Below, piece by piece: positions 8,069-31,800 of a stretch of DNA of 64,000 nucleotides (position 1 is the stretch's first letter; the number at the start of each line of letters is the position of its first letter). This DNA is from Magallana gigas (Eukaryota), in NCBI RefSeq assembly GCF_963853765.1, contig NC_088857.1, positions 56,234,001 to 56,298,000 of the forward strand. The letters run 5' to 3'. The notes beneath the pieces were generated by a model. It had not been told where the DNA came from. It searched no databases and saw only the letters and a program-made list of their open reading frames with translations. The position numbers and the translations under genes are program-made.

Positions 8069-11000
8069 ATGCCGTCGAAAATAATGCGTTATGAGGGTTT
8101 TTTGGCACTTCTAATTTCCATTCAAATTCTCAAAGGTGTAGCTCCAAATCTCATCGAAACCCGCGATGGGAAGATTCTTGGAGTATCAGACCAATGGGTG
8201 ACGTCGTTCCTAGGGATCCGTTATGCCCAGAGTCCGGTCAGGGCGCGGCGCTTGGCGCCCCCTGTCCCTGTGGCGCCGTGGAACGGGACACTGAGGGCCG
8301 AGGAATACGGTGCCGCCTGTCTACAGGCCCCGGACAGCTCGGTACACAAGTACCTAAACAACGTCCGGAGCAGCGAGGACTGCCTGAATCTCAACATCTT
8401 CATTCCCAGGGATAGCCCCGGCAAGAACATTCCCGTGCTGATTTTCATTCACCCTGGTCAGTTTCAATGCGGGGCCGCTGCCATGGTGAACGGTTCGTTT
8501 CTTGCCATGGAGACACAGGCTATTGTGGTGACTTTCAATTATCGTCTTGGAGTTTTCGGGTTTGCGTACTCTACTTCACTTTTTTCCGGGAATTATGGGA
8601 TACAGGACCAGATTCTGGCTGTTAAGTGGGTCAGGAGAAACATAGCCTCCTTTGGGGGAGATGAGGATAATATCGCTATTTTAGCAGACTCTAGTAATGC
8701 ACGGATTCTCCGCTATATACCGAAACTATATAAAACGTTTTCAAAAATTGTGTCTCTTCCACTGGATATTCCTTACTCGTTTCCAACGAATCCAACATCT
8801 GATATCGCTGAATCAACTCTAGAGTCAGTTTGCAATGGAACTATTTCACGAGAGTGCTTTGACGGGATTAACCCAGAACAGCTCCTGAATTTAACTCTGA
8901 ATCACTCTCCTTGGTCCTTACCAATATTTGGTCCGATAAATGATGGAGAAATATGGGACAAGCGCTCAGACATCCACAACAACGCCGAGCAAGTTCATCT
9001 AAATGTCGTAGCACCGTCGTATATATATCGGAAGACATCGGTGGTTATCCAGGGGAAACATTACCAGTGTACTCCGAAAATTCTTAAAAACGTCATCCAC
9101 ATGGTCTCAACTATGACGTCATCGAACGTCAGTGTGTTACTGGAAACGTTTTACTTTCCCGATGACGTCACGGCTAACAGCATCTGTAGCGAAGTGCTGA
9201 GGCTTCTGTACGATTACGCCTCTATTTCGTCCATGTTTGACCTTGACCGCGCCAGTAGATCCGCCCTCGTGTTTCTTGCCCTACTGGAACCGTATTACGT
9301 CCTACAGGGCGGGACCAGCGACCCTCTGTGTCTGTTCCGGGGAGGGGGTGAGGGCTGTGACTCTGACGCCACCGCTTCTCTTGTCCTAACAGCAGTCCAA
9401 AGCTTCCTGAAGGACAGGTCAGTGAAATAGTTCCATTTCATAATAATCATAAAGCAAGCGCTGCTTTAGGGCGAAAGTTTGAATTGTATAAAGGGAAAGC
9501 AAATTTGAAAAGTTATTTTCAAGATAGAAATAAGACAGACACTGGGAATATCCGTCACTCTTTTTTTTAAACCAATTTACCAAAGCTGCATAATTCTGAA
9601 CATTAGAGCCAAAATCAAATCAAATGAGTGAATAGAATAGTATTGCTAAATGGACAGTACTCGGACTGGCAATTCAACCCCTCCTCTTTTAAATCCAAAA
9701 TACCTCACTTTAAAAAAAGCTATTATAAGGAGTTTATGCAGAACAAAAAAAAATCTCTTTTTTTTTTTTAAAGAAGATGGGGGGATAAGATAGCGCAAAT
9801 GCCCATTCAGTTTAGTCGTAAAATACAACTTTGAATTTATTTTTTACCAATTTAATCTATTCAATATATTTTAATTCAAGTTTGCAATAGCTCAATTTCT
9901 AACTATATTCAGTTTTTAAATTATTTAACAAAAGATAAGAAAAAAAATGTTGCATTAAATTTCTGTGGTATCGAATCCATAACATAAAAACCCTAGAAGT
10001 TTAAGGTTAGCTTATGTCGGGTGCTCTAACCACTGAGCCATTTCAGACACAACAAAGTCGCGTTTTTAAATACTTTAATTATGTGTCACTTTGGCCTCGA
10101 ATTTACGGACTTGTATAATTTTTTCAAAACGTTCAATTGTTGGAATAGAAAATGGTATTTTTAATGTATAGTGGGTCACCTTTTGATAGGTTTACGTCTG
10201 ATTGAGTCAACATAATCCCGGTATTGAACAGATTTATAGGTTAAAAATCAATTTAATGTTAAATATAAATTGTTTTAAATGATTTTTTAAGAAATATCAG
10301 ATTGATTTGATATTCTAATTTTTCAGTATCTTGTCCGATCGTGCATGGGCATTTTACACGCCTTATTCATCCATCTTCTTTAAACCCATCGTACCCGCAA
10401 ATTCATTACTAGCATCATCTAAATGTTTTGAGCAGTTACCCGAATTCAGTACCTTACAGTATTACCTGAATGTTTTGAGCAGTTACCCGAATTTATTATC
10501 ATAGTATTACCTGAATGTTTCAGCAGCTACCTGAGTTCATTACCTTAGTATTACCTGCATGTTTTGAGCAGTTACCCGAGTTCATTACCTTATAGTATTA
10601 CCTGAATGTTTTGAGCAGTTACCCGAGTTCATTACCTTACAGTATTACCTGAATGTTTTGAGCAGTTACCCGAATTTATTATCATAGTATTACCTGAATG
10701 TTTCAGCAGCTACCTGAGTTGAATACCTTAGTATTACCTGAATGTTTTGAGCAGTTACCCGGGTTCATTACCTTAGTGTTACCTGAATGTTTTGAGCAGT
10801 TACCCGGGTTCATTACCTTATAGTATTACCTGAATGTTTGAGCAGTTACCCGAGTTCATTACCTTATAGTATTACCTGAATGTTTTGAGCAGTTACCCGG
10901 ATTCATTACCTTAGTATTACCTGAATGTTTTGAGCAGTTACCCGAGTTCATTATCTTAGTATTACCTGAATGTTTTGAGCAGTTACCCGAGTTCATTACC

Positions 11001-15029: not shown

Positions 15030-18000
15030 TCATCTTTTCCTTTTATTAAACTTAAATGGTTCATTTGTTGGAGTATTCCAGTGTTGTTCAGTTGGTTGGA
15101 GTAAGGTTGATGGTGACTCAGATAATATCCGGACGGACTCCGCCATGGCCGCCTGTATCCGCGCAACATTCCAGTCTCTGATCCGTGCAGCCATGTATTC
15201 CTCACTGTTTTTATTACCACAGAATGGGTTCATTATTATAGTATATTGATGATCTAACTTGGGTATTATTTTACCAGATTTCAAGCAAATATCATAAACG
15301 TTGAAATCAAAGTCTTTATAAAACTGAAAAAATCCACACAGAAGTTGGTCTAATGACTTTGTTTCTACTGTTTCTACACACTTCCATTCCTCCCCATCCA
15401 CTGGAGACTCTGTAATAAACAGAACAGTGGGTTATTGAAGTCTAGAAAACGGTTACAAGTCACAGTCGTCTAAAAGACTGGCTTATCTAAGGAATAAGGA
15501 ATCATTCTTTGAGTATTATGAGGTGATAATTTTGGTCGGGGCATGATCAAATCCAAGAAGGGCTTCATGATAGATTTGATCACGCCCCGACCGAAATTAT
15601 CTACTCATAATATTCAAAGAATGATTCCTTATTACTTATATTTACGGGATATAATTTTAAGCTATTGTACGATTATATATACAAATATAAATAAGCAAAT
15701 CCCGCTGGCGCCCCAATTATACGTCATTTGAAGTTATGGGTTATATACATGTAGTACAAAATCGATTCGTAGTGTTATCACTGGCAAAGACACTGGAAAA
15801 TGTAAATATTGCAAAATAATGTACATATACAACACAATGGATAAAAACAAAGGAAAAGAAAGACTGACTGATAAAATGAGAGAAAAAGAGAAACAAAATT
15901 AAAAAATAAACTGAAAAACAAGATTAATAACATGAAAAACAAACTGAAATAGAAAGACAAAAAATAAGAAACAGACAGAAACTGAGTGACCAAGGACACA
16001 CATCAGAAAGTTTTGGATCCCACAATGCATTAGTGGACATTAAAGTGACTCGGTTGAATTATTGGATACTTACTATTTATAACCTTGATATTCTGAATCG
16101 GGGGTATGATTTGGCACCGCTGTAGATAGAACAAGGCTAAGGCTGTGAAGACAAACTTGGACGGGAACCAGTCTACGTACAGCTTGGTCCACAGCTTAAC
16201 GGTCATAATGAAAGGTACCACACTCGGAGAACAACGGCTCAATGCATTCAGACATATAGTGGCAGTTTTTCCTGACGAATTTATAGATCTGAAATGAGAG
16301 TTTAAAACTAACAGAAGACCAAACAGTCATACAGTAATATCTAATCAAGAAATAAATGTGGTTTTGAATTCATTTCCACAGCCAAAATCTTTTTTTTTTT
16401 TAAATTGTTAGGTATGGATGGTAAGTCTCAACTTCCTAATACAATTTTGACATTTTTTCAGAAGGTATAGTCTCTATTTACTGTAACAATATGAAATTTG
16501 ATATTTTTTACTGGTATAAAGTCTACACTTACTGGTACAATTTGACATTTTTTTTTCTGGTATGACAAGTCTCAACTTCTCCATTGGATAGAATATTTGA
16601 CAGGTCATAACTTAACCATTGGATAGTATACTTGAATGGTTGTAACTTATCCATTAGTTAGAACATTTGACAGGTTGTAACTTTTCTATTGATAGAATAT
16701 TTGACAGGTCGTAACTTTTCTATTGATAGAATATTTGACAGGTTGTAACTTATCCATTGGATAGAATACTGGACAGGTTGTAACTTATCCATCAAAAGAA
16801 TATTTGACAGGCTGTAACTTAACCATTGGATAGTATACTTGACTGGTTGTAACTTATCCATTAGTTAGAACATATGACAGGTTGTAACTTTTCTATTGAT
16901 AGAATATTTGACAGGTCGTAACTTTTCAATTGATAGAATATTTGACAAGTTGTAAGTTAACCATTAGATAGAATATTGGACTTGTTGTAACTTATCCATC
17001 GGATAGAATATTTGACAGGCTGTAACTTAACCATTGGATAGTATACTTGACTGGTTGTAACTTGTCCATTGGATAGTAAACTTGACTGGTTGTAACTTTT
17101 CTATTAATTGAATATTTGACAGGTCGTAACTTTTCTATCGATAGAATATTTGACAAGTTGTAAGTTAACCATTAGATAGAATATTTGACTGGTTGTAACT
17201 TATCCATCGGATAGAATATTTGACAGGTTGTAACTTTACCATTGGATCATATACTTGACTGGTTGTAAGTTATCCATTGGTTAGAATATTTGACAGGTTG
17301 TAACTTAACCATTGGATAGAATACGGGACAGGCTGTAACTTATCCATCGGATAGAATACATGAAAGGTTGTAACTTATCCATTGGATAGAATATTTGACA
17401 GGTTGTAACCCATCCATTGGATAGAATATTTGACTGGTTGTAACTTCTCCATTGGATATAATATTTGACTGGTTGTAACTTAACTATGTATAGAATATTT
17501 GACAGGTTGTAACTTATCCATTGTATAGAATATTTGACTGGTGATAACTTATCTATTGGATAGAATATTTGATTGGTTGTAACTTATCCATTGTATAGAA
17601 TATTTGACAGGTTATAACTTATCCATTGGATAGAATATTTGACTGGTTGTAACTTATCCATTGGATAGAATATTTGACAGGTTGTAACTCATCCATTGGA
17701 TAGAATATTTGACTGGTTGTAACTTATCCATCAGATAGAATATTTGACTGGTTGTAACTTATCCATCAGATAGAATATTTGACAGGTTGTAACTTTTCCA
17801 TTGGATAAAATTTTTGACAGGTTGTTACTTATCCATTGGATAGAATATTTGACTGGTTGTAACTTATCCATCGGATAGAATATTTGACTGGTTGTAACTT
17901 ATCCATTGGATAGAATATTTGACAGGTTGTAACTTATCCATTGGATATAATATTTGACTGGTTGTAACTTATCCATTGGATAGAATATTTGACAGGTTGT

Positions 18001-21000
18001 AACTCATCCATTGGATAGAATATTTGACTGGTTGTAACTTATCCATCGGATAGAATATTTGACTGGTTGTAACTTATCTATTGGATAGAATACTTGACTA
18101 GTTGTAACTTATCCATTGGATATAGTATTTAACTAGTTGTAACAGGTGTCTACTTACTGGTAGGAAATGTCTCCCCCAACCTCTAGGAGCCTGTTATGGT
18201 ATTTTATGATTGGAACACGGGCATGGAATATTGAAAGAATGCTGTTGTAACTGTCCAACATTTTCAGTTTTTTAGCTATTTCACTTAGTAATGCTGTCTC
18301 ATTAGCCTGCTTTTGTCTGCTTCCCTGAAATGCAGAGTGTGGCAAAGTGAACATCAACAGTAGTAAACATACAGCAATATACTGTAGATTCCTAGTAATA
18401 CATGAGGGATAAAATATCTGCGAAAAATCGCTAGAAGCGCATCTCACGAATTTTGAAATCTTGCTTTTATGTTTCGGACTGATGTAAACTTAATGTATCT
18501 ATGGAAAAAAAAAATTGGCATTCACGATTTTAGGCCATTCCAAGTTTTTTCTATGTTTAGCGTCCGCGAACAGATTGGTTTTCAGATGTTAACATAAAAA
18601 AAAAAACCCACAATAGTTGTTCATTAAATTCGATCGTTTTTTTTTTTTTGTATATCGGGCTCGGGATCGCATGTTTAAATCGGGATCGAAAATCAAATAC
18701 ATGTACTTATAAACAACATTCAAAATGCAAAATGTCAGTTCTACTATAATGCAGGGAATTTATTTGTTTTTTATTTCTTACATGAAGTTTGGTGCCAAAG
18801 ATATGGATTTTTTTTTACTATATTACATATTGTATTTGTTATTTTTGTTACAAAATAAAGAAAATACCTCAAAATATATATTAAATTTTTTTTTGTTGAA
18901 CCTTTAAAGTTGTGTGTTTTTTCTAAGGTTTGTGTTTTTTTTCCTGATAGAAAGACAAGTTTTTGAGTTTTGGGTGGACGCTAAACAAAGGAAAAACTTG
19001 CAATGGCCTTATATTTCTGCAATTTAATGCAATATGGTTGAATTGCAGAATTACCGTAAGTACTTGCATAAAATAAGGAATCTACCCTACACTATTATCT
19101 GGTTCAATTACCACTTGATATTAGAGACTTTGAATTCACTTTCACCACTTTATACTTCCAGGTCAGGAATAGCAAAAGTTACTGTTCACATTTATAACAA
19201 TACTAAAACATCTATCAACAAGAAAAGACCTATTTGAGTGTGGAATTTCATTTAAAAACTGTTTTAAAAAAGATGACAAACTCTCAACATCAAAGTGATT
19301 TTGACAGCGAGGATGAGAGGACAGAGATAGTATGATGATATACGAACGGTGTAAACAAGGGCAGTGTCAAGGTCACTGGTATCACAGATGAACCCATTCA
19401 ACACCGATCCAAATGGCACCACCAGGTAATTGGGTCGGGTCAAGTCCACTACGTCCTGGATACACTGTCTGAGGAAGAACAACACCTGCTGCCTCTCTGA
19501 TTGGTTCTTCGTCCTGTTGCCGAGGATTTTCATCTGCCCCTCTATCTACACAAAAAAAAAGAACAAACAAAAAGTAACAACAACTATTTTCTGTTGAATG
19601 AAAACAATTCTAGTAAGGGGCTTATCTTACTGTTTCATTCATCAGAAGTCTTTGATAATTTCTCTGCTTCAGAACTGAAATATTCTTGCACACAGGCTGT
19701 TGTGTTGAGTTGAACTTTTTCCTGTTTATCCACATCAGAAACACCCTTTTTTCTGTCTGCTTAATAGACACAGAGTCTGACTGCAAGGTAGAAGCAAACT
19801 CTGTGAAACATAAAGGAGGACACAATGGTTTAATATGGACGCCATGCGACTTTAAAAAGCAAAATACAGTTGTTGGGTAATCAATGAAAAGTCACACCAA
19901 AGTAAGACGTCTGCAAGTCTAGAAGACTTCTTATGTAGGAAAGACGGAAAGATTAAATGATATGAGATGGAGAAAGCATATTATTGCAAAACTCATTAAC
20001 TGAACTTGAAGGGACCATATTAACAATATGTCATAAACGAAATTCATTATACATTTATAGCAATTTCAAGGAGCCATATTAAAAAATTATTAACTGTAAT
20101 TCATTATACATTTCAGCCAATTCTTAAGAAAAATTAATGGCTAACTTGTTATAAAAATCAGTTAACAGTGCTTTCAACTATCGTTAGTCATAAATCTTAA
20201 TCAATATTACCATCATTCACAAGAAATGTCAATACATGTATTATAATCTTTCCACTTCAAATATTTTCACAAATTTTGTACATTGTATGAATGCTTTATG
20301 TAGGCATCTTAAAATTTCATGTATCTTCAATGAAATTTGAAACAAAAAATATTTCTTATACCAGTAGTTGTATATTTGCTTGTTTCCATGTTTGTTATAT
20401 TCGTGTTTTGCTGAATATCCTCTACTGATTTGGGGTAGATAAAGAAACTATTGAATTCTGGACTTACATTACACCTACGGAACCCTCCGGAAAGAATGTC
20501 TGAGATATCAGTCTCATAGGTGACTAGTATAGCCTGCAAAAACAGAAAATGATAACTACCCCATGATGTATTCAGCTCAGATCAACAGACTAAGACCCAT
20601 TACAAGATAACACCCCTTCCCCCCCCCCCCCCAATCCAAAGTATTTTTTCAATTTGTACTAAAAAAATTACATCTATAAGAAATCTGAGATGATCCTTTT
20701 TTTTTACAATTTGACTAGTTTTCTATGTTTGATTTACATCTTGGACAAAACATTTGATCTTGAAATAAATTAAATATATCAAAAGAAGTCCATCTCTTAA
20801 CTCCCTGTCCAGAACTCGTTAATCGACCTTGTTATGAATTTTGAGGACTCTGGAGACAGGGGCCATGCTTTCACAGACAGTGATACACTCGGAGATGGTC
20901 CGTTGTGGACAATGAGCGAGGATGGACCGTTCCGCCGCCTGGACACACCTCCGGAATTCCTCCGACTCGTAAATGTCCGGGATTGACCAGGCCTGACCGT

Positions 21001-24000
21001 CGTCTGGGGGATCCTCCATCATTTCCATCCTCGTGTCTCCACCTGGTTCAAAACAGTATTTTGAAAGTTCATAAAAACCAAACAGGGCCCGAGTATTTTA
21101 TTTTTTTAATAATATGCTAACCTTGGTATCTGTATTCCAATACACAGAATAAAGTTTACAGTTCATCAATATCCTATATCAATTGTGTCTTACCAGGAGC
21201 AGATTTATTAGGTGACTTGACATCTTTCAAACAAAATTCTCCATGTTTATCCATCACCCAGACCCTGGGGCTCCTCTGTAAAAATCAACGCAGTTCTAAA
21301 AGCCTAACTTTTGGTACCGGAAACATTAATTTAAATTCAAAGGTGCTAGATCTAAGCTTTTAGAATGCAAAGAATATCAAATAATTAATGCATCTTAATT
21401 TCAAAGAAAAAAAGTTATAATTGTTGAAATTTTAAACTATCAAAAATTTGGATATAAAATTTCAATATCGATAGCAATGAAAATCAAAGAGGTGTTAAAC
21501 ATATCCCGGCCATAAAATTTTCAACTTACTACCCATCACATGATTATGTTGACGAATTTACAAAGACTTATTGATATTCCTTGGCATTTATTTAGTTTCA
21601 AATATCAATTAAACATCACAAATTTGGCTACATTTTTCCTGATTCATTCAAATCTAAGTAGGTCACTTTTGTCAACATAAGACAGTCTTGGGGCTGGTTG
21701 AATCTACATCCAAACTTTAACACTGATAAAATTTGTGCAAGATAGTCAACATATGTCCCTCCATCTGATCTAACTCCCAATGTCTGACAACAAAACTAAC
21801 TCCCATTGTCTGGACCTACCAGTTCTACCTCCTCTGACAACAAAACCAACTCCAAATGTCTGGACCTACCAGTTCTACCTCCTCTGACAACAAAACCGAC
21901 TCCCAATGTCTGGACCTACCGGTTCTACCTCCTCTGACAACAAAACCAACTCCAAATGTCTGAACCTACCAGTTCTACCTCCTCTGACAACAAAACCGAC
22001 TCCCAATGTCTGGACCTACCGGTTCTACCTCCTCTGACAACAAAACCAACTCCCAATGTCTGGACCTACCGGTTCTACCTCCTCTGACAACAAAACCAAC
22101 TCCCAATGTCTGGACCTACCGGTTCTACCTCCTCTGACAACAAAACCAACTCCCAATGTCTGGACCTACCGGTTCTACCTCCTCTGACAACAAAACCAAC
22201 TCCCAATGTCTGGACCTACCGGTTCTACCTCCTCTGACAACAAAACCAACTCCCAATGTCTGGACCTACCGGTTCTACCTCCTCTGACAACAAAACCAAC
22301 TCCCAATGTCTGGACCTACCGGTTCTACCTCCTCTGACAACAAAACCGACTCCTCTTTCTTCAGTCTCTCTCTATCCACATCCTGCTTTGAAGTACCTGA
22401 AAAGACAGGTAAGTAAACAATCATTGGTAAGCTATAGTATTGTAAGCTATAGCATTGTAAGTATGAGCGATGGAGACACTACATCATTATCTTGCAATAA
22501 GTGGGAAATAGGCAAGCTCTGGTTCCTTTTGTGTATTCTCTTTTGAGAAGTGGACAGGCATAGGTGTCTATGACATCTCATCGAAAAAATTCATCGATGC
22601 AACAACTCACCGAATGGACAGCTCATCGATACGACAAGTTATGGAATAGACATCTCATTGATACGACAATACATTGATACTCATCGAAAGTAAAAATAAA
22701 AGTGAAAAAAGTAGACACTCAAAGTGAAAAGTAAAATACAATAACTGATAGGTATCAAAAATTTAAATTGTATTCGCACTGATTAACATTTACATTAATA
22801 CCTTATATTGTGTGCTAACTTTCAAGGTATGGTAAATAATTGCCATTAGCGACTCGTTCTCCGAATGTTGAAACGATGGAGTAAATCTTTTTCTTTTTTT
22901 TTTCCTATAACTTTTTTTTTTCATTTTTCCGATGACAAATGTAAATAAACCATTGTAAGCTAATTTGTTTTTATTCCTTTGTGAAGGAATAAAAGTAAAA
23001 TGATTATCGCTTCCTCCCTCAGCCTTATCGTGACTGAGAATAAAATGAAGACAATAACCTAAAAAGTGTTCAAACATTTATATTTTTACTTCAAATTATA
23101 TCGATGAATTGTCGTTATCCACAAGATGTCTTTCCTTGACATGTCGCGTTGGTGAGTTTTACTTTCGATTAGTTGACTTTCGATGAGTTGTCGCATTCGG
23201 CAAGTTGTCTTTCGATGAGATGTCCGGTACCGCAGGCATAGCCTACATCCCCTTCTCTTTACAAAAATTCAGGGAGATTGGAGTCAAAACATGGGTCGAA
23301 GCATAGACCTTCTACAGTTCCGACATTTACACGTTCTCCAGAATCAATATATGAGGGCTTGCAAAAGAGAAGTGGATGTAGGCTATGCCTGTCCACTTCT
23401 CAAAAGAGAACACCTTTTGTGTAAAAAACGAACAACATAAACACAAACTGTTGATATTTATACATTGTATATTTTCTTAAAAGCTCGAAAACATGTTTCA
23501 TTTGAGTGTCTACACTTGATACTGAGAAATGAAATTTATTCAAGCCATGTTAATGGAGTCTATTTCAAATTCCACCACTTTATAAATTGAGATTATAAAT
23601 TGTGGAATATTTTGAATTTGCTGGCTGTAGCATTTCAAGCTAAAGAAGTGGAAAGAATCAATTGTTAACAAGTCTCACCTTTAGGTCAAGTTAAACAGTA
23701 TTTGTATATATGTACCTATGACTTGGACCTCTGAATCAATCATTCATTAGTACCAATCATTATTACATCTAATTTACCTGTGACTGTAAAACCAAAAAAT
23801 ATTGTTAGTATTATCACTTTGGTTAGGTTATGTATATTAGTTATATATATCACATGTCATCATATAAATCCTCCTTTTATCTGTTATTTTTGTGTATCAT
23901 TTATGATCCATCATGGATTAGCTTTTCACTTTAATCTGTTAGCTATTGTGTATCAATTATGACCCATCATGGATAAGCTTTTCACTTTCATCTGTTAGCT

Positions 24001-27000
24001 ATTGTGTATCAATTATGACCCATCATGGATTAGCTTTTTACTTTGATCTGTTAGCTATTGTGTATCAATTATAACCCATCATGGATTAGCTATTTACTTT
24101 GATCTGTTAACTATTGTGTATCAATTATAACCCATCATGGATTAGCTTATCACTTTGATCAGTTAGCTATTGTGTATCAATTATAACCCATCATGGATTG
24201 GCTTTTTACTTTGATCTTCACACACAATATGACCACACCCAAGCTATCCACTAATCACCAAAGCTGACCCATCTTAACAATTACAGCTATAGATCAACCA
24301 ATCATAGATTGGCTTCTTAATTGATTGGATAAATTAACCAATCAATACACAGGTAAAAGTCTATAAGCCAATGATAATCTTTGTTAGCATCCCAAGCTGA
24401 AAATAATCAGAATCTGGGTCTATAAAAAGACAGAGTAAGCTGGCTGGTCATCAATCACCCATTGTGATCCAATCTAAGTTAACACAGTGCTATTGCCAAC
24501 CTCTAAACATAGAATCAGCATATCTCTTAGGTGGAGAAATTGTTCACCTAATTCGTGTTGTGAAATATCACTGTTTTTTCTTTGTTGTCTTATGTAAAAA
24601 ATTGTATCAGTGAATTGTGAGTCAGTGTGAAAAGTGACAAAGTGCATTTAGTGTGTTCTAGTGTCAATAGTGTGTTGTAGTGTCAGTGTAGTGTTCCACC
24701 ATGGCTTCTCGTTCTTCCTCCCCCGCCATTGCCATCAACTTCACCACCACTCTTGAAGACATCATCAAGGCCACCATCTTTGACGATGCCCCACCCAGCC
24801 CTCAACTCGCCACCAGCCCAGACAACACCAGCGTGGACACTACTCAAGCGGAGACCAGATTTGACGAGTGCCTCAACTCCCTCTTCAGTGACCATCCCAC
24901 ACCAGAGAAATCCCATGACCTTCACTCTGACTTCCACCTTGCTCTCCAGTGTCTTCCACCGACCAGTCCAAAGAAGATCTTCAGTGACAGCACCATCTCC
25001 TCCACAGAGATCTTCACCGCTCTCAAGTCCATCTTCCGCTCAGAAGCTGACTCATCCACTCCTTCTGTGCTCATCAAGTCCGTCCAACCAAAGATTTCAC
25101 CAGCCGACCGTGAACAGCAACTTCTGCAGAGATTCAAGACCCTCCGTTCCTTTCATCCCCAGGAGATCAACGACTTGTCTTCCTTCTTCAAGTACCAGAG
25201 TGCCCAGGTGGAGACTGACCGCTACTGTGCCCTTCATCAGAACTCCAACCAGCCCCTCCACATCAGAGAGAGCATCAACCAACACTACAACATCACCCAC
25301 CACCGCATCATGGACCGTGTGGAGAGCAGTCTTCAGTTCCTCGAGGACAACCTTCCCACATCCTCACCCACCCAGACCGCCTCCCCACAGCAAAAGACCA
25401 CCACCAAGAGCAACCTTCGTAGCAGACCATCCCTGTCCCAGAAAGCCGTTCAGCTGATGGAAGAGTGGTACTACAGTCACCGAGATAACCCCTACCCACC
25501 CTCTCACATCATCCAGGACTTGGCCAGGAAAGGAGGAGTCAGGGAGGAGCAGGTCAAAAAGTGGTTCTCCAACAAGAGGAACAGAAGCCGAAGGTCATCA
25601 GGGGTCAACAAGAGGAGGTCAACCGGTGTCATCAAGAGTGTGCCCTGCTTCTGGTGAATGTGCTCTGTGAAATCTGTGTGTGCAATGCCTGTAAAATGTG
25701 ATGTCTGTGAAATTTGATGTCCTGTGAAAACAATCTTGTGAATGCGCCATTGCTGTGTGATTTTCATCTTGTGTGTGCTATGTGTGTCATATGTGATGTG
25801 TTTGCAAACCTTCAATAGCCGTTTTAGTGTTAAACATAATGTCTTTGTGCTACTTTAGTTTGCTGTGCTTGTGCTTTTTGATGTATGGTGCTGTGTTCAA
25901 TCCATTTATATATTAGTTTGTTAATTTTGTTGATTGAAACATTGCTCTAGATCAGGGCTTTAGATCTTATATACATTTGTGTTTTGTTATGAAATTCAGC
26001 TATTCTGTAGTATATTTAAGTGATGATTATATAGTGCTCATTGTAATGTTTCACCAAGTGTTGCATGCTCCTTCAGCTTTGTGTGTTTTTGCCTATAGTG
26101 CTATAAATAATTTATGAATATTCAATGAAAAGTGCTACCATTTACTAATATAAATGCATGTATCATGTTATTATTGCCTTTAATATTAAAATAAATAAAA
26201 ATTAGAAAGGTGCTGTTCTTGCTATATGCAGTTTGAATTAAAATTAAATTATACAGTTTGAACATCTTGAGGCCATGAATTGATTAGAGATACAGGATAC
26301 AGTGGAATAGAATTTGGTGGCTCAATTTTCTTGGTTTTTGTGGGTAGCCCTCGCCCACGAATTTACATCCTCAATGAAAACTAATTATAGAAGATATATT
26401 TTATCTTCTGAAATTAAAAACTAACACATCCACAAATTACATCCCCTCAAATATGCAAAAACCCACAATCCACAAAAATTATCCCCCACAATATTAAATG
26501 ATTCCACAGTACTTCTACACAAGTTGCAGCTTTTTCTTGTCAATTAGTTTTTGAGATGAATATTTTTTTTTAAATTGTTACATATATAATCCTGAGTAAA
26601 AAATTAACTACACTGTGGCCTTTGAAAGGGGATCTACATTTCTTGAGGATGCTTCCCAGCAAAATACAGCTAATCTTGCTGATTGGTTTTTAAGAATTAA
26701 TTTTTTTTTAATTTTTTTTTTCTCGATATATAACAATACCAAAAATTTGCCCCCCATTATGGCACCACCCTACCCCCAAGGATCATGATTTTAACAAATT
26801 TGAAAATAAACCTAAGGATGCCCAAGGAAGTTGAGGTTTTTCTGGCTGATTGGTTTTTAATTAAGAAGATTTAAAAGACTTTTCTCTATATATTCCCATT
26901 AAAAGATTTTCTTTTTTTTTTCATTGTAGTCTATCCGACCCAACAAGGATCATGTTTTAAACAAACTTGAATCTACATTCTTGAGTGTGCTTTAAAAATT

Positions 27001-28518
27001 TCAGCTATTCTGGCCACATGGTTTTTAAGAAGATTTTTGAAAAAATCAAACAAATTTTCAATGATTCTTGTAAATCCCCCCTTGAAGGATGGCATGGTCC
27101 TTCATTTACGATCAATCTGGTGATTAAATTTCCCTCGAAGTACAATATTCACATCGCCTTGGCTCTGTGAAACAAAACCATCATACCTTGATGCTTTTCT
27201 TTCTTTCTTTTTTTCCTCTTCTTTGAAGTTGTTGACTTCAAAGACAAAATCTGAAAATGACAAATCATAACATGATATATAGCTAGACAGATAAGTGCTA
27301 TGATTTCTTTAGTGCATCCATTTCTACAACATTCTGCTACTGTGTCTGTACCTCATCCGGACCTCCTGTTGTGGTATCTATATCTGTGGTAGGTTTATTA
27401 GCAGATAAACTATGAGGTGACGAGGACAAACTTCTGCCTGTCTGCAATGAGTTGGCACTCTTACCAAAAATCCATCTTGTACATGGATGACCACCTGAAG
27501 AAAAAAAAAAATTACTGACAATATCGATACTTCCAACAGCTTTCGATAAACAGTACTGCAGAAGCACTCATTTGATCAATTGATAATACCGAGCGCAGCG
27601 AGAGGCGGGCGAAGCCCGCCTCGCGAAGCGAGGATTAATGGTAACACATATATATAAGAAAATCAGTGAAAAATGAAAGTTGAATCAGGGGTACTAAGGC
27701 CAAAAAAAATTTCTTCCAGCCCTGGGCGCCGCCATATTGGCAGCCATTTTGTTTTTAAAAAGTTAGTTCGGTCATTGATTGACTGGTACTTATCGATGTT
27801 TATTGCCCTTAAACTCGATTAAAATTTTCTAGTGTTTCAATAAAAGGTAATTTGAATTAAAAGAAATAAAAGAGGACACCAGATAAGTTTCAATAGTGCT
27901 CTAATCAAGAAACACGACTAATTCTATGTATATCTTATCAAATTACCAGATGGAAAATAAAAACATTAACATCAAGGAACTGATCTTTTAGATACTGAAT
28001 AAAGTATTAAATTTTATTACCGCGGCATTTATATGAATTAAATTGTTAAACAATGAAAGAAGAAATAAAAAAAAAGTTCGGAATAACGTTACTCTCTTCG
28101 GCTATTTCCGAAGACAAAACATGTACGTTTTACGTCTGAAACATGACGTCATAATTTAGACTGAGCACGCCACGTTTAGTTAAACTTTGGCTAATGATTT
28201 GAGTACGTAACCAGGCGGATCCTACTGTGTGCGTTTCAAATAAATTAGTTCTACAAAAATCAATCTGCACTGTGTTAAATCTGCGCTCGGTCCAACGGTC
28301 ACACCGTTTACATATTAACTTTTGAGGAAATTCGAATTGATGTAAAAAAAATGAATACATTTTTCCGTTAAGTTTTTTTTCATGTGACAAGATAAATAAT
28401 CAATGTAAACAGAATTTTTCAATGAATTACTTGGTTGAATTCGGGGTGAAACATTAGAAACGTCTCTTAAAACATGTGTAAATGCACTTCGCCACATTCT
28501 TCCAATGAGCGCAGCCAT
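15030..28518 (-). CDS. MTPAP: Divergent mitochondrial poly(A) polymerase-like terminal nucleotidyltransferase (TENT family), 11 exons, ~564 aa
   Basis: Exons (minus): 28518-28431, 27494-27352, 27250-27187, 22396-22320, 21275-21194, 21042-20828, 20533-20468, 19545-19348, 18324-18158, 16288-16074, 15409-15030. All GT-AG, phases match, 1695 nt open. Arg-rich presequence-like N-terminus; AERSILAHCP (recalled human mtPAP AQRTVLIHCP); PFGSVLNGF..SDLD; ARVPIIKY..GDIS; SLDQLLCGFFQFYKDFDF and IMNPF (PAP-associated domain). Orthology versus paralogy is untested. Confidence 0.8.
16575..18142. repeat. 35-bp minisatellite, ~45 copies, intronic
   Basis: Unit TTATCCATTGGATAGAATATTTGACAGGTTGTAAC; lies in the intron between exons 18324-18158 and 16288-16074. 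Confidence 0.95.
18531..19011. mobile_element. MITE with AGGCCATT termini (Kolobok-like)
   Basis: TIRs AGGCCATTCCAAGTTTTT..TGTTTAGCGTCC / GGACGCTAAACA..AAAAACTTGCAATGGCCT; T/A-rich flanks. Confidence 0.7.
21772..22352. repeat. 50-bp minisatellite, ~11.5 copies, containing the exon 4 3' end and splice donor of the mtPAP-like gene
   Basis: Unit TCCCAATGTCTGGACCTACCGGTTCTACCTCCTCTGACAACAAAACCAAC; on the minus strand it reads ...GAGGAGGTAGAACCG|GTAGGT. Confidence 0.95.
22536..23412. mobile_element. MITE with ~10-bp TSD (MULE-like) carrying a nested second MITE
   Basis: TIR TTCTCTTTTGAGAAGTGGACAGGCATAGCCTACATCC / GGATGTAGGCTATGCCTGTCCACTTCTCAAAAGAGAA; flanking direct repeat CCTTTTGTGT at 22525 and 23413. 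Confidence 0.75.
22563..23232. mobile_element. Nested MITE with 8-bp TSD
   Basis: TSD CAGGCATA at 22555-22562 and 23233-23240; subterminal IR GACATCTCATCGAAA / TTTCGATGAGATGTC. Confidence 0.75.
23889..24216 (+). repeat. 56-bp tandem repeat, ~6 copies, upstream of the homeobox promoter
   Basis: CATCATGG anchors at 23909, 23965, 24021, 24077, 24133, 24189 (period 56). Confidence 0.95.
24298..24428 (+). promoter_or_regulatory. CCAAT-box cluster plus TATA box of the homeobox gene
   Basis: CCAAT/ATTGG at 24298, 24308, 24324, 24338, 24368; TATAAAAA at 24421, 280 bp upstream of the ATG at 24701. Confidence 0.7.
24701..25657 (+). CDS. Intronless TALE-class homeobox protein with PADRE motif (lophotrochozoan-specific type), 318 aa
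   Basis: Homeodomain ~25418-25606: RSRPSLSQKAVQLMEEWYYSHRDNPYPPSHIIQDLARKGGVREEQVKKWFSNKRNR (three-residue loop extension, NPYP, WFSNKR). Literal PADRE at 25100-25114 begins a helical domain. Codon bias is distinct from the flanks. Confidence 0.9.
   Translation: MASRSSSPAIAINFTTTLEDIIKATIFDDAPPSPQLATSPDNTSVDTTQAETRFDECLNSLFSDHPTPEKSHDLHSDFHLALQCLPPTSPKKIFSDSTISSTEIFTALKSIFRSEADSSTPSVLIKSVQPKISPADREQQLLQRFKTLRSFHPQEINDLSSFFKYQSAQVETDRYCALHQNSNQPLHIRESINQHYNITHHRIMDRVESSLQFLEDNLPTSSPTQTASPQQKTTTKSNLRSRPSLSQKAVQLMEEWYYSHRDNPYPPSHIIQDLARKGGVREEQVKKWFSNKRNRSRRSSGVNKRRSTGVIKSVPCFW
26298..26510. mobile_element. Short MITE
   Basis: Imperfect TIRs TACAGTGGAAT / ATTCCACAGTA. Confidence 0.5.
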
Positions 28519-28817
28519 CTTTTTAAACTCTCTAAGCAAATAAAAGGAAAACATTACAATTCTAGTGTTTCGTGCAACTAAATTACAAATTGTGCGACTA
28601 AGTAAAAGTTTACAAAACGTTCATAGCAAATTTTGTTATTTTTTTTTTACTTTCTCTCAGATTGATTTAAAAAATTTAAAGATAACACGTCTTCGAGAGT
28701 ATACGGCATCATGGCTGGTCATTGAACGTTTCAAACCACTGGGGAAGACTTATAAGAAATTTTTTCACTTGTCGTGTGTGATTTTTTTTGATAGGAACAA
28801 ACGCTATCGTTTCTGTG
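28519..28817. promoter_or_regulatory. Putative bidirectional promoter shared by the mtPAP-like gene and TUT1
   Basis: 299 bp separate the divergent start codons. YY1-like AAGATGGCTGC overlaps the minus-strand ATG. An acceptor-like TTTTTTTTGATAG at 28782-28794 suggests a TUT1 5'UTR intron. Confidence 0.65.
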
Positions 28818-31800
28818 ATGTTTGTTATTTGCGATATATGTCAGTGTGAAATATCCTCAGGTAAGAATACTATAACCATGGTTATAAAGTAACTGAAAGT
28901 AGCTATCAGCTTCTAATGCTGAATTGAGGTTTAATATATATTTATATTTATTTAGCTTTTTAAAATAGCTTGATGATAAAAAATACTCATGATACAGAAT
29001 GGAAATTTAAAAAAGTATTTTGATTGGTAAAAGTTATTAGCCAAAGTACTGACAATTTATCTCAGATGGTGAAGTAATTCTACTGGTAGGCCTAGTTTCA
29101 ATTTTTACAACCCATTAAGAGAGTTATAGAGTTTCCTTTAAATCGAATTTTATCTTATAACTTTTTTATTTACGAGTAAAATCTGTTTGTAGCGGATCTT
29201 TATGAATACCACGTCAATGGGAAGAGACATCAGGTCCAACTGGAGCGGTACAAACGCCGGAAGGACGAGTCCGAGCGCAGTGTGTACGCCCGGGGATTCC
29301 CACCCTCCACCCAGGAGCACGAACTGCTGGCCTACTTCTGCATGTTTGGACCGGTGGAAAAAATAGTTTATGATGAAAAGAAATCCATGAAAACTGTAAG
29401 TCATTGCCTCTTGTATATCAATCTTTGTGAACTTGATGAATTTTTTTCTAGCTTTTTAAATGGAACATTTAATACATTGCTTGTGATTTGATTCATGAGT
29501 TTTAAAGTTTATTGATAAGCTCATTTTCTTCTGCCAAGTGTTGGCATAACAAGCAAGAACTGATCGTCTTTCTTATATTGACTTTCTAATGAGATACCTA
29601 AGTCAGCATAATGAAGTATTTAGAGAGTAGGGAGCTTGTTTTGGGATTGGTGGGAATAATATTATCTGATAAACATTTGTTTGTGACAAAATCCTATCAT
29701 GATATTCATCAACCAGGATAGATGCTTTAATTTTGTACTTATTGAAAACAATGTTTTATATCAGAAAGTTCCTGCTTTTGCCATTGTGGAGTTTAAATCA
29801 GCTGACACAGCAAGATCAGTGGCAACTTATGGGCAGCACGTCATTAACAGTCAGCGCATAGAGATCAGGCCACGCACATTTAAAGAACTGCGAACAGAGC
29901 CCTACTTTCCATGGCAACGGGAAGATAACAATAGGGATCTGCCGTGGCAGAAGTATAACGAGTTACACCAAAAGCTGTCCGCCAACAACATACAGATGGG
30001 TCCCTACGAAGCCGCTCAACCACGGCGCAAGGGGAAAATAAAAGGCCCCGCACCCATCAAGCAGGGGAGAGCCAAGGATTCCGAGGGTCAGGACATCGTA
30101 CCCATCGATGTGAAGGAGTTCCAGACTTATCTGGAGCAGCATCAGTGTGTCGGGGTAAGGCTTCCAACTATCCTTTAGGGATAAGAGTGCTTGATGAATT
30201 AGCAATGAAGAAGGAGTAAGGCAGTAATGATGTAGTATAAGGCTGCTACAATGTAAGATCGTGTAAGCATTTGGTAATTTCAATCATGATTGTCTAGTCG
30301 TTTTGGGTGATATCATCAATTTTTGTTCTGTTGTTTGTATTGATTTCAATGGATGTAAAAACAAATCAAATTATGTACTAAATATGAAATTCATCATTTT
30401 ATTTACATGCATGTTCAATGCATTGATGAATATCTTTTAAATCAGTTTATTTAAAATGACTGTTTGTGCTTGATATCCTTGGGTGTTGACATACAAAAAA
30501 GGAATACCTTCAAGTAGTATTTACTAAAAAAAAAAAAATAACTGAATTAGAAACGTTTTAACAAGAGCTTGTACTTTGGGCAGTATGTGACAAATCCAAT
30601 TTGATTCTGGTGGGGTCTACTCATGTATTTTATCTAATATATATGAATACATTGAAGGCAATGACACCTGTCTGACTTAAACCAGGGATGTATATTTAAG
30701 AAATAAACAACGTTATTTAGTGAACATGGCGTTATGTAGCAATTGCTCTGTTGGCATATTCCATGATGCGCGCTAACGCATCATGGAAAATATGCCAGCA
30801 GAGCAGTTGCTATTCATAACGCCATGTTCACTAAATAATCGTTGTTTATTACTTATATTTGCATTTTACCACTCTCAAATACCCTGTATTAGCATAGACC
30901 TTGATATTTAGCTATTGCATCAAAAATAAACGTTCAGACTGTAATGTATCATTTTAATTCACATAGATTTGTTAACAGAATCAGTGATATGTTATAAAAG
31001 TAATTCCTTTAAAATGTTATTATAAGACATGTTTTAATATTAGATATATCAATTTTATGGAGTTGGAGAAAAACATATGATGTATCGTATAGTTGTTTTA
31101 ATCTATAACGTAATGGAAAAGAATATGATGTCACACCTTTATGATGTCATAGTATACAGACAGCGCAATTGCGATTATAGAAATATATTTGTAGTTCCTC
31201 CGTATGGACTTATAGTGGGAAAGAACAATGGATATGCAAATATTTCCTGGTAACTGTCCATTCATATAACAGAGCAACAGCCTTTGAATATTAATGAGCT
31301 TCTCTTGATAAATTAAAAGAAAGGAGGTCAATATTTGACAGCCATTTTTACTGAGCAAACTAGATAGTAACATCCCACTGAAAGTCCAAGCTCTTGTTAC
31401 AGCTCTAAATGTTTCATTTTCCCCTTGGTATATTGAGTACCAAGTAGTTAACGTCCAAGGATCTCGAGCAGTTTTCTCCTGTATTTAGAAACCTCATCAT
31501 TTATTTTGAACTCCCACTTGATCTGTATCGGTAACGACTTAACAGTTACATCAGTATCGTAACTGACATTGCGGAGTAGTTCTTTAAACCGTGGTTTATC
31601 AGGCACTACAATCGCAGTCAGTCGTGACCTTGCAGAATCAAGTGACCTTGTCCTAGGTTTGACCTTGTCCTAGTTTTGACATGACCATTGCTCTCCCTCA
31701 GATTCAGACCCAGGTGATGTTGTTAGTAGAGCTAACCCAGGTCACCACAGCCGAATTCCAGTCTCGCTACACGATCTGTAAAACTCTGGAGGACGCACTC

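What the first reader, a model, noticed from the sequence alone, without database searches (positions are those of the whole stretch)
24701..25657. Intronless PADRE-type TALE homeobox gene nested antisense in an intron of an RNA-tailing enzyme gene
Seen: an intact 318-aa ORF with a TALE homeodomain (Ser at position 50, WFSNKR), a literal PADRE motif and a helical domain whose spacing loosely recalls PBX PBC-B. It has its own promoter and AATAAA near 26190, and lies inside intron 3 (27186-22397) of the mtPAP-like gene on the opposite strand. Recalled knowledge: PADRE-bearing TALE genes are lophotrochozoan novelties expressed in early development. Inference: the cassette arrived by retroposition or TE-mediated movement; nesting implies transcriptional interference or co-regulation with a mitochondrial RNA enzyme during embryogenesis.
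Basis: partly seen in the sequence, partly recalled or inferred. Interest (0 to 1): 0.75.

Follow-up and report, generated by a model that had tools for sequence, protein, structure and literature searches.

The report
Known oyster TALE13 gene, intron-nested copy
This is the already described Pacific oyster early-embryo homeobox gene Cgi_TALE13; it does sit backwards inside an intron of an RNA-tailing enzyme gene, but it got there as a young DNA-level duplicate that carried its own promoter, not by retroposition.

Summary
Window 24701-25657 (+) is an intact 318-aa TALE homeobox ORF with a literal PADRE string, Ser50 (WFSNKR), a TATA/CCAAT promoter and AATAAA near 26190.

The window is Magallana (Crassostrea) gigas. 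The gene is Cgi_TALE13 (CGI_10015317; UniProt K1RAG1, 317/318 identical), TALE clade VI of Paps et al. 2015. It is one of the genes the PADRE domain was named from, and is reported as expressed from egg to blastula.

RNA contigs from three studies show a separate transcription unit from about 24447 to at least 26360. They also show minus-strand host exons on both sides. The e1-e2, e2-e3 and e4-e5 junctions are direct; e3-e4 rests on exact contig-length arithmetic and an open frame. Antisense nesting in intron 3 (27186-22397) of an mtPAP-like gene is therefore supported.

Retroposition is not supported. The two parent-like copies (91-92% aa) lie in a PXK/Slob-like intron on another chromosome, a nesting shared with C. 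virginica, Saccostrea and probably Mytilus. Similarity to them covers the upstream 56-bp array, promoter, 5'UTR and CDS, and stops 26-47 bp after the stop codon. dS is 0.17 and dN/dS 0.24.

No PBC similarity was found. The scan already reported the paralogous pair elsewhere (s1-366397). Low novelty.

The parts
23874..24217 (+). 56-bp tandem array, 6.2 copies, upstream of the gene; part of the duplicated block
   Evidence: TRF gives period 56, 92% matches. In the whole genome it is found only here and at the chromosome-4 TALE pair. The unit is conserved upstream of the orthologs in C. virginica, Saccostrea and Ostrea.
24218..24446 (+). Proximal promoter: four CCAAT boxes (about 24298-24375) and TATAAAAAG at 24421-24429
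   Evidence: Sequence. The CCAAT boxes and the TATA-box region are largely conserved in an 8-sequence alignment across four oyster genera; several columns within them are invariant.
24447..24700 (+). 5'UTR. The RNA contig begins at 24447, 26 nt after the TATA start. A 22-nt block at 24454-24475 is conserved.
   Evidence: X1 contig 24447-24719, with zero depth in bins 24070-24423 in X1 and X10; alignment A3.
24701..25657 (+). CDS of Cgi_TALE13, 318 aa, single exon
   Evidence: Homeodomain identical to Cgi_TALE13 in the Paps 2015 supplementary FASTA; 317/318 identical to K1RAG1.
25061..25345 (+). PADRE domain (residues 121-215); the literal PADRE is at 25100-25114
   Evidence: Conserved block in alignments A1 and A2. 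AlphaFold2 predicts three helices with pLDDT above 90 over residues 132-215.
25418..25606 (+). TALE homeodomain (residues 240-302), PYP loop extension, QVKK motif, Ser50
   Evidence: Pfam PF05920 and PF00046; alignment A1.
25658..26361 (+). 3'UTR, unrelated to the paralogs beyond about 25704. AATAAA at 26190-26199, but RNA contigs run on to 26358-26361.
   Evidence: Similarity to the chromosome-4 copies ends at 25683 / 25704. Copy-specific contigs: X1 25449-26361, X5 25643-26358, X10 25645-26358.
23874..25704 (+). Extent of the block duplicated from the chromosome-4 (PXK/Slob-like intron) locus
   Evidence: blastn at about 86% identity to C4:1659849-1661510 and C4:1668076-1666412.
28431..28518 (-). 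Host mtPAP-like gene, coding part of exon 1 (ATG at 28518)
   Evidence: The loose end of RNA contigs at 27494 is the reverse complement of the last 30 nt of this exon, in X1 and X5.
27352..27494 (-). Host exon 2
   Evidence: Contigs in X1, X5 and X10; the joint 27250/27352 skips 101 nt with CT..AC ends, which is GT..AG on the minus strand.
27187..27250 (-). Host exon 3 (64 nt)
   Evidence: Joint to exon 2 in three runs; GT donor at 27186.
22397..27186 (-). Host intron 3 (4790 nt), which holds the whole TALE13 transcription unit on the opposite strand
   Evidence: X5 contig: 141 letters left of exon 2 = 64 + 77. X10 contig: 338 = 64 + 77 + 197. Frame open across e1-e6.
22320..22396 (-). Host exon 4 (77 nt); its donor is the first of 11 repeated donor copies
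   Evidence: Depth in bin 22300-22476 matches the exon-2 contig depth x 77/177. The loose end at 22322 maps to 21248-21277.
21194..21275 (-). Host exon 5
   Evidence: The X10 loose-end sequence matches 21248-21277 with 1 mismatch; AG/GT sites and open frame.
15030..19533 (-). Downstream host exons carrying the catalytic domains
   Evidence: PF22600 MTPAP-like_central E=1.5e-7 (19267-19533) and 1.7e-5 (18157-18447); PAP_assoc E=9.5e-6 (15033-15401).

Best explanation
The ORF is Cgi_TALE13, a functional single-exon PADRE-domain TALE (clade VI / SPILE A/C-type) homeobox gene of the Pacific oyster. It is the youngest of three near-identical copies. The ancestral locus is a pair of copies inside an intron of a PXK/Slob-like gene on chromosome 4. 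In the Magallana lineage, after the split from Crassostrea virginica, a DNA segment of about 1.8 kb was copied into intron 3 of an mtPAP-like nucleotidyltransferase gene on chromosome 5, in antisense orientation. That segment held the locus-specific 56-bp motif array, the CCAAT/TATA promoter, the 5'UTR and the CDS. Because it brought its own cis-regulatory module, the copy stayed an autonomous transcription unit. It took its 3'UTR and poly(A) signal from the intron sequence it landed in. It has since evolved under purifying selection. Shown here: identity, copy number, extent of the duplicated block, synteny of the parent locus, phylogeny, dN/dS, transcription of this copy, and host exons on both sides in one mRNA. 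Inferred: direction of the copying, the DNA-level mechanism, and the function. The inferred function is a sequence-specific transcription factor acting in cleavage-stage blastomere specification, as reported for SPILE genes, with the PADRE three-helix bundle as a likely protein-interaction module.
For: Identity: homeodomain identical to Cgi_TALE13, 317/318 to K1RAG1, and TALE-VI retained in the 2018 revision. Copies: C4:1660543-1661481(+) and C4:1666462-1667415(-) at 91-92% aa, both intact. Block: about 86% nt identity from 23874/24001 to 25683/25704 only. Parent locus is ancestral: the S. cucullata locus L019 holds two copies and its flanks match the chromosome-4 flanks (PXK-like exons and a kelch/BTB gene). 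C. virginica L024 holds two tandem copies inside a PK/WH2 gene, and fused 605-aa 'PX domain-containing protein kinase-like' models sit in its cluster. Mytilus has 'PXK' models carrying Homeobox_KN plus WH2. Timing: the tree is (Cvir,(C5,(C4a,C4b))) with 100/98 support. dS C5-C4 is 0.17-0.18, against 0.49-0.62 to C. virginica. Constraint: dN/dS 0.24. Own promoter: array, CCAAT and TATA are conserved across four genera. Transcription: copy-specific 5'UTR and 3'UTR contigs in three RNA studies, with zero depth in the flanking intron bins. Nesting: junctions e1-e2, e2-e3 and e4-e5 are seen directly; e3-e4 follows from exact contig arithmetic in X5 and X10 and an open frame with GT/AG sites. Early-embryo expression of TALE13: Paps et al. 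2015, PMC5322547. Zygotic onset of A/C-clade SPILE genes at the 4-16-cell stage in mussel: PMC8524836.
Against: The e3-e4 junction was not listed as a joint, because the aligner skipped the low-complexity stretch 27190-27220; it rests on arithmetic. Logan contigs do not give strand, ends or stage, so the plus-strand origin of the TALE RNA and its 3' end are inferred. Contigs run past the AATAAA. Some contigs laid on the CDS carry paralog-state residues (K131E, Q143H), so part of the CDS depth may come from the chromosome-4 copies or from alleles. The orthologous host intron in other oysters was not examined, so lineage-specificity rests on the tree, dS and the absence of any annotated PAP-nested copy among the hits. 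Gene conversion could make the copies look younger than they are. The left breakpoint lies in the repeat array and cannot be placed.
Confidence: 0.85

Rival explanations
1. Retroposition: the cassette is a processed retrocopy of a TALE mRNA inserted into the intron.
For: The gene is intronless and lies on a different chromosome from its closest relatives.
Against: The parent copies and all orthologs are intronless too. Similarity covers the promoter and the 56-bp array upstream of the mapped transcript start, and stops 26-47 bp after the stop codon, so the parental 3'UTR is not included. No poly(A) tract or flanking direct repeats were found.
Confidence: 0.03
2. TE-mediated capture: a Helitron-, Pack-MULE- or similar element picked up the gene with its promoter and moved it.
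For: The intron is full of dispersed repeats (very high word depth at 22477-22653, 23362-23538 and 26725-26901), and the block has sharp limits.
Against: No terminal inverted or direct repeats surround the block. The only repeat at its edge, the 56-bp array, exists nowhere else in the genome except at the TALE loci, and it is conserved with the gene across genera.
Confidence: 0.08
3. The chromosome-5 intronic copy is the ancestral one, and the chromosome-4 pair derives from it.
For: In the tree the chromosome-5 copy is sister to both chromosome-4 copies, so by itself the tree does not give direction.
Against: The chromosome-4 context (PXK-like intron, kelch gene downstream, two copies) is shared with S. 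cucullata and C. virginica and is suggested in Mytilus. No relative's copy was found in a PAP-like gene.
Confidence: 0.03
4. Not nested: exons 1-3 (28518-27187) belong to a separate short transcript, and the mtPAP-like gene starts downstream of the TALE gene.
For: The junction 27187/22396 is not in the joint table.
Against: In X5 the contig has exactly 64 + 77 letters beyond exon 2. In X10 it has exactly 64 + 77 + 197, and its loose end maps to exon 5. The depths of exons 2 and 4 agree. The reading frame from the ATG at 28518 stays open through exon 6 with canonical splice sites. There is no coverage of the intron next to 27186.
Confidence: 0.05

Closest known systems
[quoted passage not shown] 2015 (PMC5322547); TALE-VI in Barton-Owen et al. 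2018 (PMC6118893); PADRE-bearing A/C-type SPILE genes (PMC8524836)
   Same: It is this gene. The homeodomain is identical, including the copy-specific DNPYPPSH. It has the PADRE domain, the QVKK motif and the 3-aa TALE loop, and belongs to the reported early-embryo expression cluster.
   Different: Nothing in the gene itself. The papers read here contain no mention of introns or nesting, of its origin as a young duplicate of TALE11/12, or of its conserved upstream array (a search for 'intron' gave 0 occurrences in both).
Cgi_TALE11 / Cgi_TALE12 pair in an intron of the PXK/Slob-like gene (chromosome 4; earlier scan finding s1-366397)
   Same: 91-92% aa identity, the same 56-bp array, promoter and intronless CDS, and also nested in an intron.
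   Different: Different host gene and chromosome. That locus is old (shared with C. virginica and Saccostrea, probably Mytilus) and holds two copies. The window's copy is single, younger, antisense to its host, and has an unrelated 3'UTR.
PBX / CEH-20 (PBC-class TALE), the name given by automatic annotation
   Same: TALE homeodomain with a small residue at position 50 and a helical region upstream of it.
   Different: No PBC domain: no Pfam hit in 13 members at E<=10, and hhalign probability 0.1% against the oyster Pbx PBC exons. The true oyster Pbx is on chromosome 2.
Intronic nested genes and retrogenes of animals (general category)
   Same: A complete transcription unit lies inside a host intron on the opposite strand.
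   Different: It was not generated by reverse transcription. The copy includes its promoter, so it did not need to recruit one. What it recruited was a 3' end.

Membership tests
TALE-class homeodomain (Pfam Homeobox_KN) | Three-residue extension between helix 1 and helix 2 with the PYP motif; WFxNxR in helix 3 | tested here: met
   PF05920 E=2.1e-10 over 40/40 profile positions. The sequence reads HRDNPYPPSH and WFSNKRNR. The Paps supplementary table lists '3 AA indel' for TALE13.
TALE clade VI / PADRE-bearing SPILE A/C-type genes | Homeodomain grouping with Cgi_TALE9 and 11-13; QVKK motif | tested here: met
   Homeodomain identical to the published Cgi_TALE13 entry. EEQVKKWF is present. Homologs occur in oysters, mussels and pearl oysters only.
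TALE clade VI / PADRE-bearing SPILE A/C-type genes | Conserved PADRE domain of about 87-90 aa N-terminal to the homeodomain | tested here: met
   Residues 121-215 align across 14 bivalve proteins with 13 invariant columns. The literal PADRE is at residues 134-138.
TALE clade VI / PADRE-bearing SPILE A/C-type genes | Expression in the earliest embryonic stages | not testable with these tools
   Transcription of this copy is shown, but the stages of the runs are coded. Early expression (egg to blastula) is taken from PMC5322547.
PBC class (PBX/Exd/CEH-20) | PBC-A/PBC-B domain upstream of the homeodomain | tested here: not met
   No PF03792 hit in any of 13 PADRE regions at E<=10. hhalign probability was 0.14% and 0.08% against the oyster Pbx PBC exons.
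Processed retrogene | Similarity to the parent confined to the mature mRNA, with a poly(A) remnant and target-site duplications; introns lost relative to the parent | tested here: not met
   Similarity extends at least 570 bp upstream of the mapped transcript start and ends 26-47 bp after the stop codon. No poly(A) tract or flanking repeats. The parent is intronless.
Nested (intronic, antisense) gene | The whole transcription unit lies inside one intron, and the host exons on both sides are joined in the host mRNA | tested here: met
   TALE RNA spans 24447-26361, inside 22397-27186. Junctions e1-e2, e2-e3 and e4-e5 are seen directly. e3-e4 follows from exact contig lengths in two runs plus an open frame. 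A direct junction read is still wanted.
Host: mtPAP-like / Cid1-family non-canonical poly(A) polymerase | MTPAP-like central palm domain and PAP-associated domain | tested here: met
   PF22600 E=1.5e-7 and 1.7e-5; PF03828 E=9.5e-6 on separate exons. Mitochondrial targeting and substrate were not tested.

The most novel reading that the evidence does not exclude
The PADRE-TALE unit (motif array + CCAAT/TATA promoter + intronless CDS) may behave as a self-sufficient, copy-ready cassette. It has repeatedly come to rest inside introns of unrelated genes: PXK/Slob-like, a TIR-domain gene in Saccostrea, and the mtPAP-like gene here. DNA-level copying of the cassette into introns of host genes would then be one concrete route by which the spiralian TALE repertoire expanded and dispersed. 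The window would hold a young, datable example in which only the 3' end had to be recruited.
Probability: 0.3. Interest if true: 0.45.

Novelty: already known. Interest (0 to 1): 0.2.

Why it matters
The gene is a catalogued member of the spiralian TALE expansion, which is implicated in blastomere specification, so finding it again adds nothing by itself. The modest addition is genomic. This copy is a young duplicate (dS about 0.17) of the TALE11/12 pair. It was carried with its conserved regulatory module into an unrelated gene's intron, remains transcribed and is under constraint. That gives evo-devo workers a clean natural experiment on what sequence is enough to keep a cleavage-stage regulator working at a new site. 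It also gives a copy-specific 3'UTR with which to tell TALE13 from TALE11/12 in expression data. The automatic names 'PBX4' and 'BEL1-like' are misleading and should not be propagated.

Tried and rejected
1. PBC-B resemblance: rejected. Pfam scan of 13 PADRE regions at E<=10 gave no hit; hhalign against the oyster Pbx PBC exons gave nothing.
2. Fold assignment for PADRE: no specific relative. The Foldseek PDB search had no hit at E<=0.001. The VIA-align wide search gave a best Z of 9.0, among generic three-helix bundles and below the roughly 13 needed for helical proteins.
3. TE hallmarks around the block: none found.
4. Ostrea synteny through translin: the oyster's translin matches are elsewhere, so the Ostrea tandem pair (RING/IQ and translin neighbours) did not help to orient either M. 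gigas locus.
5. The C. virginica representative P0002 is not on record as a gene. This was solved through cluster member P0018.
6. Raw-read run X21: too few reads, and 88% of what was laid only partly fits, so no strand information could be drawn.
Exons were examined one by one. The junction 27187/22396 therefore has no homology support from orthologous proteins.
8. The orthologous host intron in other oysters was therefore not fetched.
Full report
OBSERVATION. The window holds an intact ATG-initiated ORF at 24701-25657 on the plus strand, 318 aa. It sits in a local GC peak of 0.44, against 0.33-0.36 around it. Pfam finds the TALE-specific Homeobox_KN model over its full length (E=2.1e-10, residues 256-295) and the general Homeodomain model (E=9.3e-10, residues 240-298). 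The stated intron limits are exact canonical splice sites on the minus strand.

WHAT IT IS. The window is Magallana (Crassostrea) gigas, chromosome-scale contig C5.
- The protein is 317/318 identical to UniProt K1RAG1.
- Its homeodomain, including the copy-specific DNPYPPSH, is identical to the entry Cgi_TALE13 (CGI_10015317) in the supplementary alignment of Paps et al. 2015 (PMC5322547).
- It reports TALE1-4 and TALE7-14 as expressed at the earliest stages, egg to blastula.
- The 2018 revision keeps 'TALE-VI TALE9, 11-13' (PMC6118893).
- Work on mussel SPILE genes states that most A/C-clade SPILE genes carry PADRE and start zygotic expression at the 4-16-cell stage (PMC8524836).
All three M. 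gigas copies found here carry the literal PADRE string, so they are very probably the three proteins the name came from. The gene is therefore already known. The automatic names ('PBX4', 'BEL1-like', 'ceh-20-like') only reflect the nearest homeodomain.

COPIES AND ORIGIN. A six-frame search of the oyster's own genome finds two further intact copies at 91-92% aa identity, at C4:1660543-1661481 (+) and C4:1666462-1667415 (-). More distant clade members (25-46% local identity) lie elsewhere.

At the DNA level the window matches both chromosome-4 copies at about 86% identity. The match runs from 23874/24001 to 25683/25704 only: the 56-bp tandem array, the promoter, the 5'UTR and the CDS. It ends 26-47 bp after the stop codon. 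This is the reverse of a retrocopy pattern. The promoter is included, the parental 3'UTR is not, and there is no poly(A) remnant or flanking repeat. The parent is intronless as well, so lack of introns says nothing about mechanism.

The 56-bp array (6.2 copies, 92% matches) occurs nowhere else in the 564-Mb genome except at the chromosome-4 TALE locus. It is therefore not a dispersed TE or satellite. Its unit, the CCAAT boxes, the TATA box and a 22-nt block at the transcript start are conserved upstream of the orthologs in C. virginica, Saccostrea cucullata, S. echinata and Ostrea edulis.

WHICH LOCUS IS ANCESTRAL. The evidence points to chromosome 4.
- The S. cucullata locus L019 has two copies inside a Pkinase/WH2 (PXK/Slob-like) gene, followed by a kelch/BTB gene. 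Its flanks match the M. gigas chromosome-4 flanks in order.
- C. virginica L024 has two tandem copies inside the same kind of gene.
- The C. virginica 90% cluster even holds 605-aa 'PX domain-containing protein kinase-like' fused models.
- Mytilus has 'PXK' models carrying Homeobox_KN plus WH2.
- No relative's copy lies in a PAP-like gene.
- A maximum-likelihood tree gives (C. virginica,(C5,(C4a,C4b))) with 100/98 support for the three M. gigas copies.
- Pairwise dS is 0.17-0.18 between the window copy and the chromosome-4 copies, 0.49-0.62 to C. virginica and about 0.6 to Saccostrea. dN/dS is 0.24.

The window copy is thus a Magallana-lineage duplicate, at roughly a third of the depth of the Magallana-Crassostrea split, and has been kept under purifying selection. 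An earlier follow-up in this scan (s1-366397) described the chromosome-4 pair in a 'Slob-like' intron, with the same upstream motif array. My independent look agrees.

NESTING. The minus-strand gene has these exons:
- e1: ..28518-28431 (ATG at 28518)
- e2: 27494-27352
- e3: 27250-27187
- e4: 22396-22320
- e5: 21275-21194
All have GT/AG sites, and the frame stays open from the ATG into the exon at 21042-20819. Downstream exons carry MTPAP-like_central (E=1.5e-7 and 1.7e-5) and PAP_assoc (E=9.5e-6).

RNA contigs from three studies (X1, X5, X10) were laid on 22300-27600.
- They show the joint 27250/27352, which is GT..AG on the minus strand, at depths of 73-159.
- The loose end beyond 27494 is the end of exon 1.
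- An X10 loose end of 199 letters at 22322 maps to 21248-21277, which is exon 5.
- The e3-e4 joint itself is not listed, because the aligner skipped the low-complexity run 27190-27220.
- The lengths are nevertheless exact. The 392-nt X5 contig has 141 letters left of exon 2, which equals 64 + 77. The 596-nt X10 contig has 338, which equals 64 + 77 + 197.
- Exon-4 bin depth equals the contig depth times 77/177. The intron next to 27186 is not covered.
I take nesting in intron 3 (27186-22397) as strongly supported, though not seen as a single junction read.

TRANSCRIPTION OF THE TALE COPY. In X1 and X10 the bins 23539-23892 and 24070-24423 have zero depth. Depth of 10-57 then runs from 24424 to 26193.
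- The X1 contig begins at 24447, 26 nt after the TATA start.
- Contigs over the copy-specific 5'UTR (24447-24719; 24474-24786) and the copy-specific 3'UTR (25449-26361; 25643-26358; 25645-25955 with no differences) can only come from this copy.
- Some contigs laid on the CDS carry paralog-state residues (K131E, Q143H). Part of the CDS depth may therefore be TALE11/12 or allelic.
- Contigs do not show strand, ends or stage. The plus-strand origin is inferred from the promoter and the left boundary.
- The 3' end is open, since contigs continue past the AATAAA to about 26360, where a repeat starts.
- Because similarity to the parents stops at about 25704, the 3'UTR and poly(A) signal were recruited from the intron.
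- The mature TALE RNA does not overlap any host exon.

PADRE DOMAIN. Residues 121-215 are conserved across oysters, mussels and pearl oysters, with 13 invariant columns. AlphaFold2 on a 13-sequence alignment gives pLDDT 86, and above 90 over the last 84 residues. It predicts three long helices: model residues 33-48, 52-79 and 85-113. Neither Foldseek (no hit at E<=0.001) nor the wide VIA-align search finds a specific relative. The latter gave a best Z of 9.0 among designed and natural three-helix bundles, below the level that means anything for helical proteins. PBC similarity was tested and failed. A short N-terminal motif (TTLEDII.ATI, residues 16-26) is also conserved across the three bivalve orders.

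HOW IT MOST LIKELY WORKS. Shown: an autonomous unit of motif array, promoter and intronless CDS was copied at the DNA level into a foreign intron. It is transcribed there and has been kept by selection. Inferred from the family literature: the product is a TALE transcription factor acting in cleavage-stage cell specification, probably partly redundant with TALE11/12. The PADRE bundle is a plausible protein-interaction surface. Nothing here tests interference or co-regulation with the host. Host mRNA and TALE RNA co-occur in the same three libraries, which argues only against strict mutual exclusion at the sample level.

NOVELTY AND VERDICT. The gene, its class, its domain and its expression window are published, and intronic nested genes are common in animals. 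Two points appear undescribed in the papers read here. The first is the young DNA-level origin of TALE13 from the PXK-intron pair, together with the conserved regulatory array. The second is the recurrent residence of this family inside introns of unrelated genes: PXK-like, a TIR gene in Saccostrea, and mtPAP-like here. This is a modest genomic footnote, so interest is low. The decisive missing test is the state of the orthologous host intron in other oysters.

Noticed in passing
window 21783-22353: A 50-bp tandem array (11.4 copies, 96% matches) repeats the end of host exon 4 together with its GT donor. RNA contigs in X5 and X10 use the first copy (exon ends at 22320). 'Goes back 50' joints in X1 and X21 suggest that some molecules read into further units, or that copy number varies. 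The unit length is not a multiple of 3, so another donor copy would shift the frame.
   Followed up: partly
window 22477-22653 and 23362-23538: Very high RNA word depth (up to about 4000). Many joints skip 809-819 nt between 22556-22563 and 23372-23377, with variable filler letters. These look like the two ends of a dispersed, widely transcribed repeat that here carries an insertion of about 815 bp, in the same host intron as the TALE gene.
   Followed up: no
window 8069-9430 (+), 42951-44615 (+), 37039-38226 (+): Three long single ORFs. One of 453 aa has a carboxylesterase domain (E=2.8e-62). One of 554 aa has B-box and NHL repeats (TRIM-like). One of 395 aa has no Pfam match.
   Followed up: no
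L018 10001-10945 and L020 10001-10927 (Saccostrea echinata, S. cucullata): A second, more basal paralog (68-69% aa) lies inside the range of a TIR_2-domain gene in both Saccostrea species, with a single 56-bp unit upstream. The M. gigas genome search shows no counterpart.
   Followed up: partly
L017 725-999 (-) (Ostrea edulis): A fragment matching residues 96-193 of the TALE protein lies on the opposite strand upstream of the Ostrea tandem pair. It is probably the remnant of a third copy. The Ostrea pair sits next to RING/IQ and translin genes; no PXK-like gene was called within the 10-kb flanks.
   Followed up: no
window 24743-24778 (residues 15-26): An N-terminal motif, TTTLEDII.ATI, is nearly invariant in oyster, mussel and pearl-oyster members of the clade, well outside the PADRE domain and the homeodomain. 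It was not mentioned in the passages of the three papers I read.
   Followed up: no
window 24454-24475: A 22-nt block right at the mapped transcript start (ATCACCCATTGTGATCCAATCT) is conserved in 7 of 8 promoters from four oyster genera. It may be an initiator or 5'UTR control element of this gene family.
   Followed up: partly
window 28431-28860: Host exon 1 starts about 300 bp from a plus-strand gene running the other way (ORF 29699-30178 has a weak RRM-like hit). It was not examined here.
   Followed up: no
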